Source: Bugula neritina (Eukaryota; Animalia; Bryozoa). Taken from it: a stretch of 64,000 nt of DNA. The position numbers and the translations under genes are program-made. Below, piece after piece: positions 6,101-50,449 of this stretch. The notes under the pieces are model-generated. The model made no database searches and was not told the origin of the DNA. It was given only the letters and a program-made list of their open reading frames with translations. The stretch covers positions 23,610,767-23,674,766 of the forward strand of contig OZ037766.1 of the NCBI GenBank assembly GCA_964035545.1, written 5' to 3'. Each line of letters opens with the position of its first letter. Within the stretch, counting starts at the first letter, position 1.

Positions 6101-8323
6101 CGCTGTTGCTGCTGCTGAGGTCGAACTGTAGAGATTAGAGGCTGGCCTTGTGCTTGAGGCCTCTGGTGCTACAAGATATTACTTACTCTACACAAGCAGA
6201 CACGCAACTATAATTTGCAAAGTAAAATATACTTACATATATATTAAGGATTCGCATTTAAAAAAAACTGGCATAGCTTAGTCGTAAAGCTGTAGGCTTA
6301 CTTACAAATTGAACAAGGCAAAAAGCTGAAATAGTCAAAATAAATCCAAAGCCGCCATTGGTAAATTCTGGTATTAGTGAGCAAGATAACTTATTGAAAT
6401 GAGCTCCTTACCATTCCATTCAGCTGCACTGCAGTGACAGTTTGTGAAGGACGAGAAGGAACAGTGGACATCAGATGCACATTGTTATTGGTTGCCATAG
6501 AAGCAGGCCTAGCAGTCTGTGGGAGTTGAGATTGCTGTACATTAAAGACAGAAGACGTAGCTACAGATGAATTCGAAGCTAAATGGTATCCTCCAGTACT
6601 GCTACCACCAACTCGAATTATTGGCTGTGAAACGGGATGTTGCCGACTGACAATTTGCTGAGATGATAGTTGGCCACCATTGATCTGCTGTGAGACGGAG
6701 CTGTTGGTGTTTACAGTCGTTGATACTATCATTGGCTCATTAGACGAATTGGTTGCATTACTGTTAAGAGAACTCAACCCATTCAAGTTTCCAGCATCTA
6801 AGGAAGTTGGCATGGAAAGAAGAGAGTCTGGCAGGTCATTGAGTGCAGAGAAATCAACTTCTAAAATGGTCAACATGGAATGTAGAGAAACAACTGATAG
6901 AATGTGACTGCATTCTCCAAGACAAGGTAAGTTTTAAAGTATCACTGAAACCGTGTATTCTATGTTTGTGTAGAATTATTTATTCAATTATTGGTAATTT
7001 GATTTAGTATTTTGTTCAAAATCATAATAATAGCTTAAAAAAACTAGGTGTCTACATGCACTTTTAGACAAGAATGAGTTTCAATAACATTGCAACTTAT
7101 TTTAATGACTAACTTGTTCCCTAACTTACTTTCAGAATAAATCGATCTTAGATTCAGTGAGTGACTATTACCAAAATGACCAGCTCTAGGTTTAACTTGA
7201 AAGTTAAAACTAAGACAGGTTATCATATTCATTGATATAACAATAACTAATTTATATCATCAATTATATTAGTATTGTCATTAGTATTTGCAGTTTTATG
7301 AGTGATATTCATATGATCGTATTGATTTTGATCTACTAGTACTAATGTGAAGCATACTACTCGTCAAAAGCTTTATTATACCTATGGCTATAGGCTATAG
7401 TATAGTTCAAGTTATACCAACACTTATAGTTATACTTATAAATTATAGTGACCCTCATAGTCAGAGCAACAGTAATAGTAATTTCAATGTTTATACAAAT
7501 AGTTATACTAATAGTTCAAGTTAGTAAGACTTAAAGTGGGGTATTACTATTACTTTCTACTATTAATAATATACTTCTTAAACATTGATAATAAACAATC
7601 ATAATCATTGTACTTGTTATGAGAAGATACTCAGTAAAATAAATTTTAATTTAAATGTTATTCTAATATGAATCAAAATGTTAATAATTATAATAAGTAA
7701 TTAAGTAATTTTACTTACACTTAGTTACCGTTAGTTTTACAGTCACTGTCTGTGTTGTTATGACCTTAAGTTTACTTTCTTTTTTACAAATTAAAATTTT
7801 AGAACAAAAATGTAATTCAAATTGTCATTTATAAACATTTATAATTTGAAATCCAATACTAACAGTAATAGTGATACACATAGTTGCTTATAGTCATAGT
7901 GCTAACTAATACTAATAGTAACACTACTAGTAATATTAAATTCAATACTATTATTAATAATAGTATTAAATTCAATATTACTATTACAGTATTAGTGTTA
8001 CTAAATATTATTAATAATAATATTTATATTTATACCGGAATTATTCTTATTTAAATATTTATACTTTAATGGCTACAATAATAATTATGAACGTAAATTT
8101 AAAGTATAATTTAATATTCATAATCACTATTATGATTATTATATTTATTTGTTATGCTTGTAAGTAATTAAAATAACGACAGTTTGAGTTCAACGTCAAC
8201 TTTAATTTACTTTTACTTTAAGCTAAAATTCAATTTTTATTTTATACCTGTGAGAGCAGTCGTTTCATCTGGATTCTGAATTTTTGGTCTTTTTGGACTT
8301 GGTTCATCATCTGGCATCTGCAT
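200..8323 (-). CDS. CREBBP: CREB-binding protein / p300 histone acetyltransferase, 5' part (continues beyond position 1). Exons: 8248-8323, 6412-6860, 5911-6168, 5008-5101, 3862-4098, [2642-2713 optional], 2011-2271, 1200-1358, 579-663, 200-317
   Basis: N-terminus [16 protein letters not shown]...[15 protein letters not shown] resembles CBP/p300 (PKRxK...DFGSLFDLExDLPDEL). TAZ1 reads [79 protein letters not shown], with all 12 Zn ligands. MKKAYAALG motif present. KIX reads [57 protein letters not shown]. All junctions are GT-AG and phase-compatible. Confidence 0.96.
319..399. repeat. 19-bp minisatellite (tacagaaacaggtaaacta), ~4 copies, abutting the KIX-exon acceptor
   Basis: Unit read directly; one substitution in some copies. 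Confidence 0.9.
1005..1073 (-). other. ~69-nt near-perfect hairpin in a CBP intron
   Basis: The - strand reads TTTTGTGGCTTTGGTTGCTGAGCAATGCT-ATTGCCACTTC-AGCATTGCTCAGTAACCAAAAACGCAAAA: ~29-bp stem with a 2x2 internal loop and G-U pairs. Confidence 0.8.
1427..1490. repeat. 22-bp tandem repeat (cagtcacagcaagatctagttt), ~3 copies
   Basis: Read directly. Confidence 0.85.
3171..3514. mobile_element. MITE (non-autonomous DNA transposon) in a CBP intron
   Basis: ~70-bp imperfect TIRs (AGCCTAGGGCCAC...AAGGTGTCCACTGTA / TACAGTGGACACCTT...GTGGCCCTAGGCT), flanked by TA on both sides; no ORF. Confidence 0.8.
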
Positions 8324-8830
8324 TGTTAACTTGCAGCCGTTTCAAGTTGTACACATTTAGGATTAAAAACTCATTTTATTTTTATCATGTTGGATTTTAC
8401 AAGAATTTACGGTCGATTCACATTTAGTGATTTACTTGGGAAGTCTCGTGAATTCTCGTCTTAATCTTAAAAACGAGAGTCTGTCTAATATTCCTTATAA
8501 CTCGGTGATATATTGTTTTTGTGTGTATTCTTTTAAACCAGTTGTGTAATTTTATTAATTCTTTCACTTGGCCAAGATAAGAAATCAAGTTCACATCGAA
8601 GAACGCAAATAACTGACTTAAAAGACGGACGGAAAATAAATTTACAAATACAATATGGCAGACTACTTTGTCATTGAACTTGAGATTAAAAGTCGTAATT
8701 AACTGACTCTTGTTGTTTGCGCAAGTAAGTGATATTTACGATATAAATAGCGACTCACAACAGTACAATAGTAATGTGAAGGTCAAATTTCTGACGCAAG
8801 TGTGCGATCTACGAGTGTGTGTAACGAAAG
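8324..8830. promoter_or_regulatory. Putative bidirectional promoter region for CBP (-) and PAM16 (+)
   Basis: CpG-enriched patch between the CBP ATG (8323) and a + strand donor CAA|GTAAGT at 8725, which could splice to the TAG acceptor at 11110 ahead of the PAM16 ATG exon. Confidence 0.55.
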
Positions 8831-41842: not shown

Positions 41843-44601
41843 ATACGTAGATAAGTGTAGACCATAGAGAAGCAAGTTCCCAAGTGCTGGTAATTTTACA
41901 TAATAACTTCTAGCTTTGTTTATTGTTATTAATATTGCTATTTGCTAAAGTATGTTTTAATCATGTTTAAGAAATGTCATTTATGAAATCGTCAGCTGTA
42001 ATATTGATGAAGACTTGGAAAGCTGTAATTATTAATTTTTGTTTTGTATTAAGGGAAGACAACTTTGATTACAGAGCGATGCCATAATACATAATCAAAT
42101 TATCTATATCTACTCGCTCATTAGAAATACTAGCAGCTGTATGTAAATAATTACTATTTGAAGGTAGAAGCATGGAGCATTCATTCACAATTCTATAAAA
42201 ATGGGAGACCAAGTTTTTTATTTAATTAAGCATTACTATTGTATATAATTATATATTATTCTGCTATAGTACTTTATTCTTATATGCTTTTACACTGGCG
42301 TCTCAATATACAACCACAAAACTATAACTGTAATGTCTTTGTATTTATTATTATTGTTCTCATGTAAATGATCACTTAAGGAATATTAATATTAGCTGAT
42401 CTTCATAGGACGTGAAATCAACAGAGAGTATAAACCTTTCAGTCACTTAAGATGTTCTACTATATAGCAATCAAGTTGGCCCTAGGTTGACTTATAAACT
42501 ATTATAAGATATAATGTGCTAGCAATAGATATTTTTATTGCATTATTTCAATTATCAAGTGACAAAGGCATCATTTTAGAGATAATATTTTGGTTAGCAA
42601 AACAAGTTGGTTACTATTAAAATCTGATGCTAATGAAAGATGTACTGCATTCGATTTCCCTTATAAATTGTATTCAACAATAGACTGAGGGATGATGAAT
42701 ACTGCATAAGCAGAAAACGCAAGTTTAAATAAAAACTGTTTATTACAAGAAATAATACAGACTTAGTAAAAAATCAGAAATTGATCAAATTGCTGTTCAT
42801 AACTAAATGACTGCCGAAACAACCAACGAATTATAAAATATATTTAAAAGGCTCATTAGAAAATGAAATAACTTCTAATGTTAAACGCTTAGATATTATA
42901 TTTTAACTTCAGTGAGTGATAGTAGCAGTAATTAGTATATATGCTTGACAACTAGATCTAAAAATGACGGAGGTCTAGACTAAAATACTCGTACTTTGCG
43001 TAGTCAGTGTGGCACAAACATGGAACTGATTGAAGAGTACAATAGTTATGTAATATGGTCTCTATTTGCATTGCGTAGATGTGTGTCAGTCCATAACTCT
43101 GGCTAGCAGGTATATTCCCAGCAGACGTCTGAACACACTCTACAACAACAGCACTAACAGTACGAGTTATTTTACTATTACATAAAGCAGACAACTCCTT
43201 ATAAATACTTATAGTCGCTATTATACATAGTTGATAGCATCTGTTATGCAAGGAAATGCTAGGAGCCACAAACTTGTCATGTGATGTTACATAACATCTA
43301 TAAAAAATAAGTAAAAGCATTGAAATATATGAACTCGGGCCAACTAAAGCATTTTATCTTTAACAAATAGGTTTAAAGGTTTAAATTAAAAAACTCAGGG
43401 TTTGTGAAAATTACTACAAAATCACTTTAGTAATTTGGAAATTATTAAAAATGATCTGAATATAATATTATGGTAGACTTCATTTTTACACTGAATTATT
43501 AAAAATACAAATGTGGTTAGGAGATTCGCACTTCAATTGCTACTAGCATAGTTACACTATTTAGTAGTACAGCATTTTATAATGATGAATTAAAACCTTA
43601 TTTACACTATGTGTATATGTGTATATACACATATACATATTCACACAGGCATGCAATCCCGAGTACACAATTATTTATCACAATTTCATGAGGAGATTGA
43701 GAAGGCAACTTCAAAAACAAAAACTGCAAAATTGAACATTGTAAACATTGACAGACAAAACCTCTCAACACATTTATGGAATTAATTTTTACAAAAAACA
43801 TGAGTAAAACGTACCACGAAAAATTCTTTTGATCGGACAACTTTTTATAAAAAACAGCGAATTCTGTCCAATATTTGGATTGAGACATTCCACGAGCATG
43901 AAAAGCTTTTGTTATATTAGTACAGCTTACAGAGCTTCTTAGCTATGTTAGCCATCATATGATTTTTCTGCATTTTGTTTGGCCAAGCTTATGTACAGAT
44001 ATTTTGGCTACCATAAAAAAGCTAGCTTTTAGACTATTATATAAAATCAGCACTTTATGTCATTCACTCTCTTTCATATTCAGTGTTTGGTGGTCACTAC
44101 ACGTCGATTAAAACAACAACTTGCATTGTCCTGAAGAATGTAAAAGTGAATCACTACATTAGCTAAAAGGATATGCATCTTTCACAAGCAATTTCATTGC
44201 TGGTATAACCTATTTCAACCATAAATGCACAATTTGAAAAACAAAGTTAATGAGCCATCTTATGATAGCAGAGATACTTAGTAATGCAGAAAACACACTC
44301 AACCTTATAGTTAGTGGATTATATGCCACCCAAAAAAAAGTTTCAAGATCAGCCAAAGAAAAGTAGATGAAGCAACAATTAAACATTGGCAACTAAAAAA
44401 GGCAATAGCATTGCATCTCCAGCAGTTTTCACAAAAATATTTCTGAAACTTTAGTAAAAATTCATCTTTCTAATCTAAATTTTTTAAATTTTCAATAATG
44501 ATGACGAAGTTGCCTTCCCGTTGACCAAGTTGGAGGGCAAACAGTAAGCTTACTTGATTACAGTAGACGGACCAGAATCACATCTGAAGTGATACGTCAC
44601 A

Positions 44602-47600
44602 TTAAACAGGGACAGTGTGACCAAACCTCAGTCTGAACTGCTCAAAGAACATGAATGTAAGAACTGTTTGTGGCCCGAGTCGAGTGAACGCAGGTATAAA
44701 ACCTTTGTAGAATGATGTGAGTCCAGTGGAGGCTATGTCTTTCGCACAAGCTAGGATTCCTGCAACATACTGGCAGATATTAGCTCACAATCTCATGTAT
44801 TGATACTGCAAGTCATCCCTTTCTATAAGTGAATTCTTACCTGTGATATAATAGGATATAATATAATAGAATGTAATATAACATGATATAATAGGATATA
44901 ATCAAATAAAACATTATATTATAGAACATAATATGATATAATATAAGATAGCATGATATATTGAAGTATAATATGATAAAATAAAATAGAACATGATATA
45001 ATGGAATATAATACGAAATAAAACAAGGACTAGGCACAACTTGGCAACTAAAGATCAGGAGAAATTAGTATATCAATTATTAGAAGTATAAAGATTGTGA
45101 TAACTTGTATTCAAGGTTCACTATGTGATGTTTCTTACCAGAGTATGTACCAGGGGCGGCATTCATCATTCTGGTTTTCATGACATCAACAGGCTGTGCC
45201 AAAGCAGTAGCAACGCTAGCAGCGCTAATACTCGCAGTGAAGTGTGTCGTCATATTATCTCTGAAATCACACACCAGATCTTTCCTGACTCCATCAATTT
45301 TATTGACTCAAACAATTTCATATCATTCAATTCCTTAGCTCACAGTTCACATTATTCAAGTAATAACTGTCAATCACTCACTGGGTCACATTATCACGCA
45401 ATAGACCGATATTTAGAAAGCTTGTCTCTTTTCTTACAATAATGTTAATAGAGTTACTGTTGACATCGAGCAAAACATGCTATTAGCTTTACTAATGGAA
45501 ATTAAAGCAAAAGCAAGGGGAAAGAATTTAGAAAAGGCAAAGTATAGTACCTAAAGTATTGAGAAGCTAAGAGGCTCTGTTTGATTTGATCATACATAGC
45601 AATCTGGCCAATCGTCACTAATACTGCTCTGGTACTGGCCATAACTGAACCAGTGAACAGTGTGCTAGCACCTACATAACAGATAACATGCGGGTGATTG
45701 GTGAACCAGAAACTAGCAGGTGTTAACCAATCAGGCACTAGCTACCAGAGGTTTCACCTAGCCACAACTCAACTGCCTCAAGTTTCAGCCAATTGAAATC
45801 TCAGTTTAAGTAGTGAAGTTGAGACTAAGCGTGCGGCCATGGCAAGTGGATGTTCAGCACTGGTCACATAGCAGAACTTCCACTCGAAGCTGGAAGATGC
45901 ACTCGAGCAGATTTTAGGTGGTTTTATGTGAACACAATCCGGAACAGCTATTGCGGAAATGGCTGGTAACTATTAAGTGAGCACACTTCAAGCTTCAAGG
46001 TCACAATTTTACTTTCTAGAGATCAAGTTTGTCTACTTTTTGTGTTTTTATATGGCATTGGATAAAAATGTCATTAGCTAGAAAATTTCCGCTCTTGCTG
46101 ACAAAACATTGTGTATGGTAGATAGTTTTTACAGCAGAAAATCCGTCTAATGTGGCCCCACGCTTACTAATCACAACAAAGGTGTAATCTAGCGAATTTT
46201 CAGCTATATCAGAAAGGATCATGCAAGTTGACCATATCCTGTTAGTGTTATTCCAGAAGTTATGAGAGAAATCTCTTGTCTTGCCAGAACATGTTCAGAC
46301 TATTATGTGAACTCCAAGCGTCAGTAGAGGTTACCCGCTAAGGAGTGGATTTAACAGTGACTTTCAAATTGTAAGTATTAAAGAAGAGTGATTTGACAAC
46401 CAACTCTTTACTAACGGATAATGGCAGAGCATGTGCCCAGACAAGAAATCCCTTTTTATAAAAAAAAAAAACAAAAAAAGCATTTATAGCAACTGAAGAG
46501 ACATGCAGTGACAATATTATTACGCACTTAGGACGATCAGATCAGTGGGCGTGACCGTACTTACTTGAAGTAAGGGGTGCCAACCAGTAACTGTTTAAAC
46601 TGGTCATACATGGCGATTTGACCAACAGTTATGAGAACAGCTCTGAAACTGGCTGTGACGGCACCGTTGAACAAACAGCTTGGACCTTTCAATGTACAAA
46701 CGTTAAGCTTGTAAATTAACATTTATACTAAGTAAGCAAAACAATAGGTTTACTAATTCATTATTTTCTTTAGAATAAGTGAAAAAATAATGAACTCTTT
46801 TTAAAGTAATATCCTAACCAAATAATAAATTAAATTTTTGAATGTAATATTGTTCTAGCTTAGCTCTTGTTTTTTGAATGAAAATGTTCTATACTTTACA
46901 TAGTCTTCAACTATGAATCCCTGCCTTTCAGTTCTAAGGTGACTTAACAAAGTTATGTGCAGAATTATAATATAGAGAATTTGTATAAAATTGTGTTGAG
47001 ATAATATAAAGTAACAAGAAAACAAACTATTGAAATATTGAAAGCATTGACGGCTAACCTTCATAACGAGCTATTCGATACAACCCATGGAACACATTCT
47101 TGTAATTCCTCCTCTGGTCTACGGGTATCTTCATGTCATTTTGCAGTCTAACATTCACAAGGTCACACGGAGTTCCTGCGGCATAAAAATTCAAAAACTT
47201 TAGAAAGCCAATAAATTTATAAAAGCAACTTACAACGACAAAACACACACTTTATATGTTCGTTTAAATGATGTTAGAACGGTCCATATTAGCATGACTA
47301 CCCTGTAGATTATCGCAAGCTTCATCTAACAGTTAGCTATGATTGATAGTATAGTGCCACTGCCTGATAAGTAAAACTATTATAAAGATCAAACAGAGTC
47401 TGTAACTGGCCAAAAGGCAGTAATTAGCTAGGAGTTCTAATAGTGGCTACACACAATTTAGATTTACTAGAGTTTGATCAATTTAATCTACAGGTTTACA
47501 TGCTGCAACATGTAGTATTTTAAAGTCAGACCACAATGCCTAATGTATTTACACACTAAGAAAAAAAACTGCATGGAAACATGTAACTGCTTTGTATATA

Positions 47601-48693
47601 CAACTGTATCCATCTGGCCATAGCTTTACCTAATAGTTGCAGCTACTCATCAACCACCCCCCTCTCTCTCTACCCGAGTTAACCTAACCTACCTACAACC
47701 ACTCTTTCTACCCGAGTTTACTGCAACATACTCACCTACGACTCCACCAATACCACCAGCAAATGTCGCAATGATGACTTTTTCATGAAAAGGTAACTGT
47801 CTACCATTTGTTGTTCTTTGTCCCTGAATTTAAACAAACTCGAATGAAACAAAACTGGCAAAGTCAAACAAATTGTAATTTTAGTGAGTTGATGCAACAA
47901 ATGCAGAAAATTCAATACAAGTTACAAAAAGTTTAGCAGATTTTATTCAAATAAACAATTCATCAACTACGGTTGGCAGGTTTACTAAATTATTATACCA
48001 CAGGACATTAATTTCATGACAAACTTTATATGAAGAGTTATTCCCACCTTGATATATTCGTAGACAGCAAATCTAGTGAGTGAGTATGTCATTTGTCTCC
48101 CAACTGAGGCCGATATACCATTGTATAACCCCAGAAACCCTTCATTTCGCACCACCTGCTTTGCCATACCTATACCAGCATAAGATTTGCAAAACAGTCT
48201 TTCGCAACTTGCAATATTGTAAATTCATTTGTTTGCTCTTTCTAGTGCCTCAATTATTCATAGCACTCAAATAAAATATACTGGAAGCACAACTTTATTA
48301 ACTTTACAGTTGCTCTCATTAGCTTGTCAATGTGCATAGTTGCTCACAACTATATTTGTAATATGATTCAGTTTTTAACGTTAAAATCATTGTCACTGTT
48401 TCAAACGATATAAAAGAGTCTTACGACAAAAACAGGGCCAATAGTGACAATCCGACCTGTACATGTAACACAGCCAACTAAAAGGTTCATGATAATATCA
48501 CACTTACTTATTGAAATTCTGTAAGTACTGACTGATAGTAATAATTATACCTACCTACAAGTCCAAGTTGTGCTTTTTGTTGCGTTTGCAGATGCACTTT
48601 CAGCAAATCTAGAGGATGGGTGCACATTGCAGCAGTAGCTGAGGCTAACCCTCCATGATACCATAAAGCTACTTGCTTCTTTGGCCCATCCAT
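44602..48693 (-). CDS. SLC25A10: Mitochondrial dicarboxylate carrier (Dic), 288 aa. Exons: 48555-48693, 48048-48169, 47736-47823, 47059-47175, [46565-46685 OR 45551-45671], 45139-45260, 44602-44759
   Basis: WYHGGLASATAAMCTHPLDLLKVHLQTQQ, GLYNGISASVGRQMTYSLTRF, GTPCDLVNVRLQND..QRRNYK, QPVDVMKTRMMN, FYKGFIPAFTRLGPQTVLTFMFFEQ. Three Px[DE]xx[KR]-type carrier repeats; the 867-nt frame is open with either alternative exon. Confidence 0.96.
44840..45020. repeat. Degenerate (ATATA/ATATG)n pentamer tract in a Dic intron
   Basis: Read directly. Confidence 0.75.
45551..45671 (-). CDS. SLC25A10: Dic alternative exon 5B (121 nt): GASTLFTGSVMASTRAVLVTIGQIAMYDQIKQSLLASQYFR
   Basis: TAG| acceptor, AG|GTACT donor, phase 1 to 2, open frame. 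Confidence 0.9.
46565..46685 (-). CDS. SLC25A10: Dic alternative exon 5A (121 nt): GPSCLFNGAVTASFRAVLITVGQIAMYDQFKQLLVGTPYFK
   Basis: AAG| acceptor, |GTAAGT donor, phase 1 to 2, open frame. Confidence 0.9.
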
Positions 48694-50449
48694 GTCTGTT
48701 TAATCTAAACTGCAAGTCATACGTTTTCAAGTGAAAACACACAGTATTATTAGAAGAGTAAAACAGAATAAGTAGAATTGTATAGTAAATTTAGTTCAAT
48801 AAAATAATTCAGTAGAGTGGCTACCACCACATATAAAGTTCATGCATTTAATTGGAATATTCATCATCAAACTAGATATTATAAATGAGCTCATAACTAC
48901 CACATGTAACTGGAAGAGAAATAAGCCTAGCATGAGTGAAAAACACTGCACACAAACGGCAAAACACTAGTCCAAATTTTGATTGTATTTATTCCATATA
49001 ATAGTTGGCAATACCAAAAGTAAATAGACATGCATAATAATATTCAGATGGTAATACTAGTAGTAATACTGATATAGAATAAACCATAGTAATATAACTT
49101 GCTGAGCCCAAACTTACCCTTTTGAATAAAAGAGTAAACTAACAGTTAATGATTTACCACACTACACATGTGAATCATTAAATCGAAGAATTCAAAGTAA
49201 AATAATCTATAAAGAGCTTAATGGCATTGATAATCACAATATTGGTTGTAATATGAGTATCTGAATAAGTGTAAAAATAAGTGTAAAATAATAGAAGTTA
49301 CAGTAATAGTTATACTCATAAAACTAGCAAAACTGGAAAACAAATTTGACATAGCATATATCTTACTATCTGGCATTCATCTTCAATTGCATTATTATTA
49401 TTACGATTATTTAGTAAGTTTTAATTACCTTGAGTTACATAGTAAAAAATAATATAGATATGGTAATAAAGATCGTACTAATAATAGCAATGTTGTATTG
49501 CTATTAGAAAAATCTAACTATGGGAAAATTTGACATAATTGGATCACATCTAGTTAAGCTGTGTCTGTAAGCACCATGTCATCAATTTTAGTTATAATAC
49601 TATTAGTATCGATAGTTTCTAGTATTAGTACTATAGACATAGTAGTACTATTAAATAGTGCACAAGTAACAATTAACATTAGCATAAACTGACAAATGAT
49701 GAACAGTAAAATTACAGTCACTGATTTATTTTAAGTCTACATACTTATCTTATTCTTAGTATATGCAAATGTATAGTAAAAGTAACCAAGTAAAGTATAA
49801 AACAATAAACTCACTCAAACTAAAAGATCTTAATCTGAATTCGATAGTCATAGTGACAGTCACTGTTAGTGTCATGCATTTGGACTCTTGGAGTTGGAGG
49901 AATACCAATAGTCAATCTCACACTCAAATACTATAACTCATTACCACTAACAGTAATTGCTTAAGTTACCAAATGATCGAATTATTGATAGTCAAAAACG
50001 ATTGGACACAATCATAATAATAAATTCATAATCATAATTTGGGAATACTAATGATTATGATTATTATTGTGATTATGATTAAATTTAATATATCATAATG
50101 ATAATCATTGTCATTATGATTATGGACATGAGACAGGACATGGTTTACGTTAGTGCTACGATTACCACTGTGATTGTGATAAGCTTTTTTCCTAAACTTA
50201 AATTTAAACATCCAAATTTGATGATATTTATATTGATCTTGATAAACATATCATCATCATGAAGTTGAACTTGAACTCTAGTCTTCACTGACACTAGACT
50301 TCAACCGAGGTTTAACTGAAGCCGAAAACCTTAGGCTTGAAGTTAACTTAAGGTTTAACCTAACTTTAGGTTTGTGTCGCCATCATGATGTATATTTAAT
50401 GACTAAAGTAAATGAAAGAATTAATTTACTCGTAGCAATAAATAAAAAC

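What the first reader, a model, noticed from the sequence alone, without database searches (positions are those of the whole stretch)
45551..46685. Tandem-duplicated, mutually exclusive helix-4 exon in the mitochondrial dicarboxylate carrier
Seen: two 121-nt exons with the same phases (1 to 2), intact splice sites and 26/41 aa identity. Including both, or neither, shifts the frame, so exactly one must be used. In the shared GQIAMYDQ block six third positions differ silently (GGT CAA ATC GCC ATG TAT GAC CAG vs GGC CAG ATT GCT ATG TAT GAT CAA), which points to long purifying selection on both copies. Known: this segment encodes the end of matrix helix h34 and TM helix 4, which carries substrate contact point II and the cytosolic-gate [YF][DE]xx[KR] motif. 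Mutually exclusive exons are established for the phosphate carrier SLC25A3; I do not know of a described case for SLC25A10. Inference: one gene makes two carriers that keep the contact-point R-A but differ around it (AVTASFRAVLITV vs SVMASTRAVLVTI; a Cys only in 5A), possibly a tissue- or condition-specific metabolic switch.
Basis: partly seen in the sequence, partly recalled or inferred. Interest (0 to 1): 0.85.

Follow-up and report, generated by a model that had tools for sequence, protein, structure and literature searches.

The report
Either/or helix-4 exons in dicarboxylate carrier
An invertebrate's only mitochondrial dicarboxylate-carrier gene holds two old copies of the exon for membrane helix 4, and its messenger RNAs carry one or the other, so one gene makes two versions of this metabolite transporter; I found no paper describing this for this carrier.

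Summary

- **Gene:** a minus-strand, seven-position gene (48693-44602) encodes a 288-aa mitochondrial dicarboxylate carrier (DIC/SLC25A10 orthologue). It is the only one in this 216-Mb genome.
- **The pair:** exon position 5 exists twice, 5A at 46685-46565 and 5B at 45671-45551. Each is 121 nt, in the same phase, with AG/GT splice sites. They share 26/41 residues and 76/121 bases.
- **RNA evidence:** contigs from four studies join each copy to exon 6. Both copies also continue into exon 4. One run holds both complete branches, exon 4-5A-exon 6 and exon 4-5B-exon 6.
- **Exclusivity:** including both copies gives a stop in the third codon of 5B. Including neither gives a stop after three codons.
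- **Selection:** dN is 0.24-0.28 and synonymous sites are saturated.
- **Age:** the pair is old but lineage-restricted. The nearest relatives I could reach (about 85% identical in other exons) have one exon 5 and, instead, a tandem whole-gene copy. Lingula, Lineus and a tardigrade have single copies.
- **Parallels:** Owenia isoforms differ only in the helix-4 region, and nemerteans carry arrays of alternative helix-6 exons, so the theme looks recurrent.
- **Literature:** no paper on mutually exclusive exons in this carrier was found.
- **Open:** whether the two proteins differ in function is untested.
- **Verdict:** a new member of a known kind, like SLC25A3 exons 3A/3B.

The parts
48555..48693 (-). 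Exon 1: start codon at 48693, helix 1 with the signature P-L-D-L-L-K
   Evidence: ORF and Pfam Mito_carr positions 7-40; read joint to exon 2; GT donor
48048..48169 (-). Exon 2: rest of repeat 1
   Evidence: Read joints on both sides in 4 runs; AG/GT sites
47736..47823 (-). Exon 3: start of repeat 2
   Evidence: Read joints; AG/GT sites
47059..47175 (-). Exon 4: helix 3 signature P-C-D-L-V-N-V-R and matrix helix h34. It ends with one base of a split codon and is the shared upstream partner of 5A and 5B
   Evidence: Pfam positions 24-58; joint 46685/47059 and exon-4 letters on both the 5A and 5B contigs
46565..46685 (-). Exon 5A, 121 nt: linker F-N-G, helix 4 with S-F-R-A-V-L-I-T-V and Y-D-Q-F-K. 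It holds the only cysteine that differs between the two copies
   Evidence: Pfam positions 62-94; joined to exon 6 in X2, X4 and X8 and to exon 4 in X8, with exon-4 letters hanging off in X1, X2 and X4
45672..46564 (-). 893-nt intron between the two copies. It shows no similarity to the other flanks. UGCAUG motifs lie at 46506 and 46224 and a GCAUG at 45691
45551..45671 (-). Exon 5B, 121 nt: linker F-T-G, helix 4 with S-T-R-A-V-L-V-T-I and Y-D-Q-I-K
   Evidence: Pfam positions 62-93; joined to exon 6 in all 4 runs; its contig runs on into exon-4 letters in X8 and X4
45139..45260 (-). Exon 6: helix 5 with P-V-D-V-M-K. It is the shared downstream partner
   Evidence: Pfam positions 4-37; joints 45260/45551 and 45260/46565
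44602..44759 (-). Exon 7 coding part: helix 6, with the stop codon at 44604-44602. The 3' UTR continues to about 44554
   Evidence: Pfam positions 47-92; read joint; frame check

Best explanation
This is a real pair of mutually exclusive, tandem-duplicated exons in the animal's single dicarboxylate-carrier gene. Each mRNA takes exon 5A or exon 5B between exons 4 and 6, and either choice gives an intact 288-residue carrier. The two proteins differ at 15 of 41 residues. The swapped piece runs from the linker after matrix helix h34 through the whole of transmembrane helix 4. It therefore holds the contact-point II hinge and the mobile 'gate element' of domain 2. The contact-point R-A-V-L, the G-Q-I-A-M stretch and the gate motif Y-D-Q-x-K are identical in both copies. 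The differences lie before the arginine (T/M at -4, F/T at -1), at two I/V swaps, inside the gate motif (F/I), and at the cytoplasmic end of the helix.

Shown: both exons are spliced in, each to the same neighbours, and both are under purifying selection. Taking both or neither creates an immediate stop codon.

Inferred: such mis-spliced forms are removed by nonsense-mediated decay, which is what enforces the one-of-two outcome. The two isoforms probably differ in kinetics, regulation or lipid contacts rather than in substrate class. The choice is probably regulated between cell types or conditions.
For: Anatomy and frames.

RNA: four runs from four studies give the joints 45260>45551 (4 runs), 45260>46565 (3 runs) and 46685>47059 (X8). 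In X8, two 179-nt contigs are the two complete branches: about 30 nt of exon 4, then 5A or 5B, then 30 nt of exon 6. The contig depths of 5A plus 5B add up to roughly the depth of the constitutive exons in all four runs (155.6 against 137-152; 173 against 151-234; 82.6 against 40-77; 33.2 against 28-35). The 5B:5A ratio varies from 0.55 to 2.3. The tool warns that contig depth is a poor measure.

There is no retrocopy: exon 6 and exon 5 match only this locus in the genome.

Selection: dN is 0.24-0.28 with dS saturated. Of 20 coding differences between the window and the RNA lineage, 19 are silent, including the only one listed in 5A.

Family: all exon peptides hit Pfam Mito_carr in the right order. 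The nearest named proteins are mitochondrial dicarboxylate carriers.

Structural reading: contact point II lies on H4 and [YF][DE]xx[RK] lies on even-numbered helices (PMC12410006, PMC7611774). The arginine aligns with the contact-point arginine of the equivalent helix in solved ADP/ATP carriers.
Against: All RNA evidence comes from assembled contigs, not raw reads. Rare both-in or both-out forms, true expression levels and tissue patterns therefore cannot be read from it. The runs are only guessed to be RNA, although the GT-AG joints and the lack of a retrocopy make DNA unlikely. They differ from the window by 1-5%, so they come from another strain or sibling lineage. No functional difference between the isoforms has been shown, and the key binding and gate residues are identical, so the two proteins could be equivalent. 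I found no convincing RNA-structure or splice-site incompatibility mechanism. The nearest relatives lack the pair, so it is not a deeply conserved feature.
Confidence: 0.85

Rival explanations
1. The splice choice is real, but the two proteins work the same. The pair would then be kept because each exon copy has become tied to a different splicing or expression context, or simply because losing either copy is now harmful. That is subfunctionalisation of regulation, not of transport.
For: Every residue with an assigned role is identical in 5A and 5B: the contact-point R-A, G-Q, and Y-D-x-x-K. Many of the differences are conservative (I/V, V/I, K/R, T/S). Helix-4 exons evolve fast in this lineage in general: dN is 0.22-0.25 against the relative's exon 5, compared with 0.08-0.10 for exons 4, 6 and 7.
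Against: dN/dS is far below 1 in both copies although they have diverged at 15 of 41 residues. Non-conservative changes sit one and four residues before the contact-point arginine (F/T, T/M). The known carrier case, SLC25A3 3A/3B, gives isoforms with different kinetics (from my own knowledge of Fiermonte et al. 1998, not checked here).
Confidence: 0.3
2. One of the two exons is mainly a 'poison' or noise exon. Its inclusion, alone or together with the other copy, would serve to down-regulate the gene through nonsense-mediated decay rather than to make a second protein.
For: Joint inclusion gives an immediate stop. Contigs cannot exclude low-level both-in forms.
Against: Each exon on its own keeps the full 288-codon frame. 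Both single-inclusion forms are present in several studies at comparable contig depth. No both-in joint was reported. Both copies show strong purifying selection at the protein level.
Confidence: 0.05
3. The tandem pair is an assembly artefact: two alleles or haplotypes, or a collapsed paralogue, laid side by side.
For: None beyond the general possibility in a long-read assembly.
Against: The copies differ at 37% of bases, and their flanking introns are unrelated. A DNA run holds 91% of the sampled words of the 4.5-kb stretch. RNA from four studies splices each copy to the same exon 4 and exon 6. No second DIC gene exists in the genome.
Confidence: 0.01

Closest known systems
SLC25A3 (mitochondrial phosphate carrier) exons 3A/3B of mammals
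   Same: It is in the same protein family. It has a tandem-duplicated pair of about 40-codon exons used one at a time, which swaps a membrane-helix segment inside the folded carrier. It is cited as an established mutually exclusive pair with a developmental and tissue switch (PMC5740500).
   Different: It is a different carrier and a different part of the protein: the N-terminal region of repeat 1 rather than helix 4 of repeat 2 (position from my own knowledge). It occurs in vertebrates. Isoform kinetics and a disease link are known for it, and nothing functional is known here.
Tandem-exon-duplication mutually exclusive exons enforced by frame shift and NMD (Hatje et al. 2017, PMC5740500)
   Same: The exons have equal length, equal phase and homologous sequence, and they lie inside a folded domain. 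The exon length is not a multiple of three, so joint inclusion breaks the frame. That paper reports this as a common way exclusivity is kept.
   Different: That catalogue is of human and Drosophila genes and does not mention SLC25A10. NMD was not tested here.
Whole-gene duplication of DIC in other animals
   Same: It also yields two DIC proteins that differ in helix 4, among other places. The nearest relative (L009) has a second tandem DIC gene. Scallops have two adjacent DIC genes. An Anopheles entry (P0159) looks like two fused tandem genes.
   Different: There the whole protein and its promoter are duplicated. Here only 121 nt are duplicated, and the rest of the protein and the promoter are shared.
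Alternative duplicated exons in other spiralian DIC genes (Owenia fusiformis; Lineus longissimus, Tubulanus polymorphus)
   Same: One DIC gene makes isoforms that swap an even-numbered helix. The two 304-aa Owenia isoforms differ only in residues 164-188 (end of h34 and the first half of helix 4). The Lineus gene has four tandem homologous last exons for helix 6, matching NCBI isoforms X1-X5.
   Different: The exon borders differ (Owenia) or the helix differs (helix 6 in nemerteans), so these are independent duplications. They exist only as database isoform annotations.

Membership tests
Mitochondrial carrier family (SLC25, Pfam PF00153) | Three tandem repeats of about 100 residues, each matching Mito_carr | tested here: met
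   Exon peptides match the profile in order: exon 1 at positions 7-40; exon 4 at 24-58, then exon 5A/5B at 62-94; exon 6 at 4-37, then exon 7 at 47-92. Short exons score below the whole-protein cut-off on their own (14-17 bits for exons 4, 5A and 5B). Exons 1, 6 and 7 pass it.
Mitochondrial carrier family (SLC25, Pfam PF00153) | Px[DE]xx[KR]-type signature on odd helices and [YF][DE]xx[KR] on even helices | tested here: met
   P-L-D-L-L-K in exon 1, P-C-D-L-V-N in exon 4 (N at the last place; the relatives' and other animals' DIC sequences read here have the same D-x-V-N-V-R) and P-V-D-V-M-K in exon 6. Y-D-Q-F-K in 5A and Y-D-Q-I-K in 5B. Motif definitions come from PMC12410006.
Dicarboxylate carrier, DIC/SLC25A10 orthologue | The closest named relatives are DIC rather than other carriers, and the gene is single-copy in the genome | tested here: met
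   Full-length proteins found through the exon-5 profile, and their kin, are named mitochondrial dicarboxylate carrier or SLC25A10 in arthropods, annelids, molluscs, a brachiopod and vertebrates. The exons are 58-68% identical to them. The next-best match in the own genome to exon 7 is only 53% identical. No formal reciprocal-best test or tree with other carrier subfamilies was made.
Dicarboxylate carrier, DIC/SLC25A10 orthologue | Exchange of malate, succinate, malonate, phosphate, sulphate and thiosulphate | not testable with these tools
   This needs reconstitution into liposomes. The substrate list comes from PMC12410006.
Mutually exclusive tandem-duplicated exons | Adjacent homologous exons of equal length and phase with intact splice sites | tested here: met
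   121 nt each, phases 1 to 2, AG/GT, 63% base identity (76/121), 63% residue identity (26/41).
Mutually exclusive tandem-duplicated exons | Each copy is joined in RNA to the same upstream and downstream exons | tested here: met
   joints exon 6-5B (4 runs), exon 6-5A (3 runs) and 5A-exon 4 (X8, with exon-4 letters hanging off in three more runs). The 5B contig continues into exon-4 letters in X8 and X4.
Mutually exclusive tandem-duplicated exons | No productive mRNA carries both copies or neither | tested here: inconclusive
   No such joint is listed, but contigs drop rare variants. By sequence, both forms stop at once, so neither can make the carrier.
Mutually exclusive tandem-duplicated exons | Regulated use, specific to tissue, stage or condition | not tested
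   The only hint is that the 5B:5A contig-depth ratio varies from 0.55 to 2.3 among four runs. The tool warns against reading levels from contig depth. No sample descriptions were available.

The most novel reading that the evidence does not exclude
Spiralian animals have repeatedly and independently made the dicarboxylate carrier modular. They duplicated the exon for an even-numbered 'gate' helix and spliced the copies as alternatives: helix 4 in this animal, the h34/helix-4 segment in the annelid Owenia, and helix 6 in nemerteans. Sister lineages reach the same end by duplicating the whole gene. If so, the contact-point/gate element of one domain would be the natural tuning knob of this carrier. 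These natural isoform pairs would then be ready-made chimeras for finding out what sets DIC kinetics or substrate preference.
Probability: 0.35. Interest if true: 0.65.

Novelty: new member of a known kind. Interest (0 to 1): 0.5.

Why it matters
The dicarboxylate carrier links the TCA cycle with gluconeogenesis, fatty-acid synthesis and sulphur metabolism. In the model animals where it has been studied, variants arise as separate genes where they exist. Here a single gene yields two carriers that differ only in helix 4. According to current models, that helix carries the contact point that discriminates substrate classes, and it is the hinge and moving gate of domain 2.

This gives a clean natural experiment. 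The two proteins are identical except for 15 residues in one mechanistic element. Comparing them in liposomes would show which carrier properties that element sets. It also adds a second carrier, after SLC25A3, to the short list of mitochondrial carriers diversified by mutually exclusive exons. Together with the relatives' tandem gene copy, it illustrates that exon duplication and gene duplication are interchangeable routes. The find is not a new kind of mechanism, and this genome appears to hold many such exon pairs.

Tried and rejected
- **RNA structure that could enforce exclusivity.** An inverted-repeat scan of 45200-47120 gave only short chance-level pairs. The 12-nt hairpin just upstream of 5B folds no better than shuffles (z -1.9). 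Dropped.
- **Splice-site incompatibility or steric hindrance.** All sites are ordinary GT-AG, and the intron between the copies is 893 nt, so neither applies.
There are four in 1.8 kb against about 1.4 expected. One lies downstream of each exon, so they do not tell the copies apart. Kept only as a lead.
- **Chimeric origin by deletion between two tandem genes.** Rejected: all exons of the window are closer to the relative's orthologue than to its paralogue.
- **Dating by a tree of the 39-residue segment** (91 rows; only hits aligning without gaps over nearly the whole exon were kept). 5A and 5B fall with the nearest relatives in one weakly supported, unresolved group (81/77). The order of duplication and speciation stays open.
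- **Search for fragment ORFs of other species carrying a 5A-like and a 5B-like exon.** Only 9 hits, and no species with two forms.
- **Owenia genomic DNA.** It was withheld, and I did not seek it another way.
- **The damselfly 'isoform X2'** was not on record.
- **Left out.** All searches were exon by exon, by reference. The frame check printed only lengths and phases. There is therefore no structure model of either isoform.

Full report
**What is in the sequence**

On the minus strand between 48693 and 44602 lies a gene with seven exon positions. Read joints and a GT-AG check fix the model:
- exon 1, 48693-48555
- exon 2, 48169-48048
- exon 3, 47823-47736
- exon 4, 47175-47059
- exon 5A, 46685-46565
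- exon 5B, 45671-45551
- exon 6, 45260-45139
- exon 7, 44759-44602

With either exon 5 the frame stays open for 288 codons plus the stop, and every intron is GT-AG.

The two exon-5 copies are each 121 nt. Each takes one base from exon 4 and gives two bases to exon 6. They share 76/121 bases and 26/41 residues. In the whole 216-Mb assembly the 5A peptide matches only itself and 5B.

**Is it used?**

I laid the contigs of four runs from four studies on 44300-48800. The runs are only guessed to be RNA, but they show GT-AG joints at every intron. The genome holds no second copy of exon 5 or exon 6, so a retrocopy cannot explain the joints.
- Exon 6 is joined to 5B in all four runs and to 5A in three.
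- 5A is joined to exon 4 as a listed joint in X8. In X1, X2 and X4 the letters hanging off the 5A contig are the tail of exon 4.
- The 5B contig of X8 continues into 19 letters that are exon 4 with one variant base. The X4 contig does the same more shortly.
- In X8 two contigs of 179 nt each are the two branches of a splice bubble: about 30 nt of exon 4, then 5A or 5B, then 30 nt of exon 6.
- No 5A-5B joint and no exon 4-exon 6 skip was listed. Contigs can miss rare forms, so this is absence of evidence only.

The contig depths of 5A and 5B add up to about the depth of the constitutive exons in each run, and their ratio varies from 0.55 to 2.3. The tool warns that contig depth is a poor measure, so I treat this as a hint.

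**Why only one at a time**

The exon length is not a multiple of three. Reading 5B after 5A gives K-C-stop. Joining exon 4 directly to exon 6 gives E-I-I-stop. Both stops lie far upstream of the last junctions. By the established rule such mRNAs should be removed by nonsense-mediated decay; this is inferred, not tested. This is the commonest way exclusivity is kept in the human catalogue of such exons (PMC5740500).

I found nothing else that would enforce the choice:
- The splice sites are ordinary.
- The intron between the copies is 893 nt.
- Inverted repeats are at chance level, and a small hairpin before 5B is unremarkable.
- GCAUG motifs are mildly enriched but lie near both exons.

**Selection and age**

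Between 5A and 5B, dN is 0.24-0.28 and synonymous sites are saturated. Nei-Gojobori gives no estimate and maximum likelihood gives about 21. The flanking introns share nothing. The RNA runs come from a lineage 1-5% different from the window. Of 20 coding differences listed, 19 are silent and one is V to L. The only one listed in 5A is silent. So both copies are old and constrained.

How old is less clear. Contigs from ENA metagenome assemblies hold the same gene from an unnamed relative.
- Exons 4, 6 and 7 of the relative are about 85% identical to the window's, and synonymous sites are saturated there too.
- Locus L006 covers exon 4, both introns and exon 6, and has a single exon 5 with the same borders. 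A lenient search found no remnant of a second copy.
- Locus L009 holds a second, more diverged DIC gene directly upstream of the start of the orthologue. That lineage therefore has a tandem gene copy instead.

The window's genome has no second DIC gene. A tree of the 39-residue segment puts 5A, 5B and the relatives' exon 5 in one weak, unresolved group. The brachiopod Lingula, the nemertean Lineus and a tardigrade have one copy of this region, with different exon borders. The duplication is therefore restricted to this animal's lineage. Whether it predates the split from the L006 species, with later loss there, cannot be decided.

**What the exon encodes**

The exon peptides match the Pfam mitochondrial-carrier repeat in order, and exon 5 covers positions 62-94 of the second repeat. 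That is the linker after matrix helix h34 plus the whole of helix 4.

In solved ADP/ATP carriers the best match is the equivalent helix of repeat 3. There the exon's arginine aligns with the contact-point arginine, and M-Y-D-Q aligns with the gate motif.

Two reviews support the reading (PMC12410006, PMC7611774):
- Contact point II on helix 4 discriminates substrate classes.
- [YF][DE]xx[RK] on even-numbered helices forms the cytoplasmic network.

Both copies keep R-A-V-L, T, G-Q-I-A-M-Y-D-Q and K-Q. They differ at 15 places:
- in the linker, including the middle residue of F-x-G
- at -4 and -1 from the arginine (T/M and F/T)
- at two I/V swaps
- inside the gate motif (F/I)
- at the cytoplasmic end of the helix

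5A alone has a cysteine. From this I infer tuning of kinetics, lipid contacts or regulation rather than a change of substrate class. This is inference only.

**Family**

Full-length proteins reached through an exon-5 profile, and then through their own relatives, are named mitochondrial dicarboxylate carrier or SLC25A10 across animals. The window's exons are 58-68% identical to the best of them. Hence there is no full-length query and no structure model.

**Comparison with what is known**

The closest precedent is the phosphate carrier SLC25A3, with its mutually exclusive exons 3A/3B (PMC5740500). Five full-text searches found no paper that describes mutually exclusive exons in the dicarboxylate carrier. 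The library does not hold all journals.

Database annotations do show related cases that nobody seems to have discussed:
- Two Owenia fusiformis proteins of 304 residues differ only within residues 164-188, the end of h34 and the first half of helix 4. The borders fit the Lingula/Lineus exon, not the exon here.
- The Lineus longissimus gene has four tandem homologous last exons for helix 6, matching isoforms X1-X5. Tubulanus has two.

These look like independent events of the same type.

**Verdict**

It is a new member of a known kind: well documented by RNA, lineage-restricted, and of moderate interest. Earlier notes of this scan report many other exon pairs of this kind in the same genome, and they call the animal a bryozoan, which I did not test.

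Noticed in passing
L009:608-3967 and L009:5592-5717: In a relative found in ENA metagenome assemblies, a complete second DIC gene lies directly upstream of the start of the orthologue. It is 74% identical to the window's exons 4, 6 and 7. Its signature motifs are altered (T-H-R-L-N-L-L in place of T-H-P-L-D-L-L), but the exon matches found contain no stops. It may be a diverging or decaying tandem gene copy.
   Followed up: partly
L012:5968-6063, 7030-7125, 7318-7413, 8441-8617: The DIC gene of the nemertean Lineus longissimus has four tandem homologous copies of the last exon (helix 6). They match the different C-termini of NCBI isoforms X1-X5. Tubulanus polymorphus isoforms X1 and X2 differ in the same way.
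   Followed up: partly
proteins P0339 and P0395 (Owenia fusiformis CAH1793748.1 and CAH1793747.1): Two annotated 304-residue DIC proteins of this annelid differ at 11 residues, all within 164-188 (end of h34 and the first half of helix 4). This probably reflects a separate pair of alternative exons.
   Followed up: partly
window 44540-44560, minus strand: About 50 nt after the stop codon there is a consensus-like donor (GTAAGC). At 44554 the RNA contigs of all four runs leave the window sequence for up to 255 letters, and those letters are not found anywhere in the 64-kb window at up to 4 mismatches. This could be a 3'-UTR intron with a distant acceptor or a structural difference between strains.
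   Followed up: partly
window 46506, 46224, 45691, 45480, minus strand: Four GCAUG motifs (two of them UGCAUG) lie in the 1.8 kb around the exon pair, against about 1.4 expected. One is 58 nt after the 5A donor, one is 19 nt before the 5B acceptor, and one is 70 nt after the 5B donor. They could be binding sites for an Rbfox-type splicing regulator. There is no conservation test.
   Followed up: partly
proteins P0159, P0160 and clusters of P0358/P0378: Gene-level duplication of DIC seems common. An Anopheles dirus entry of 516 aa looks like two fused tandem genes. A beetle entry of 387 aa carries the third repeat twice. Scallops have two DIC genes with adjacent accession numbers.
   Followed up: no
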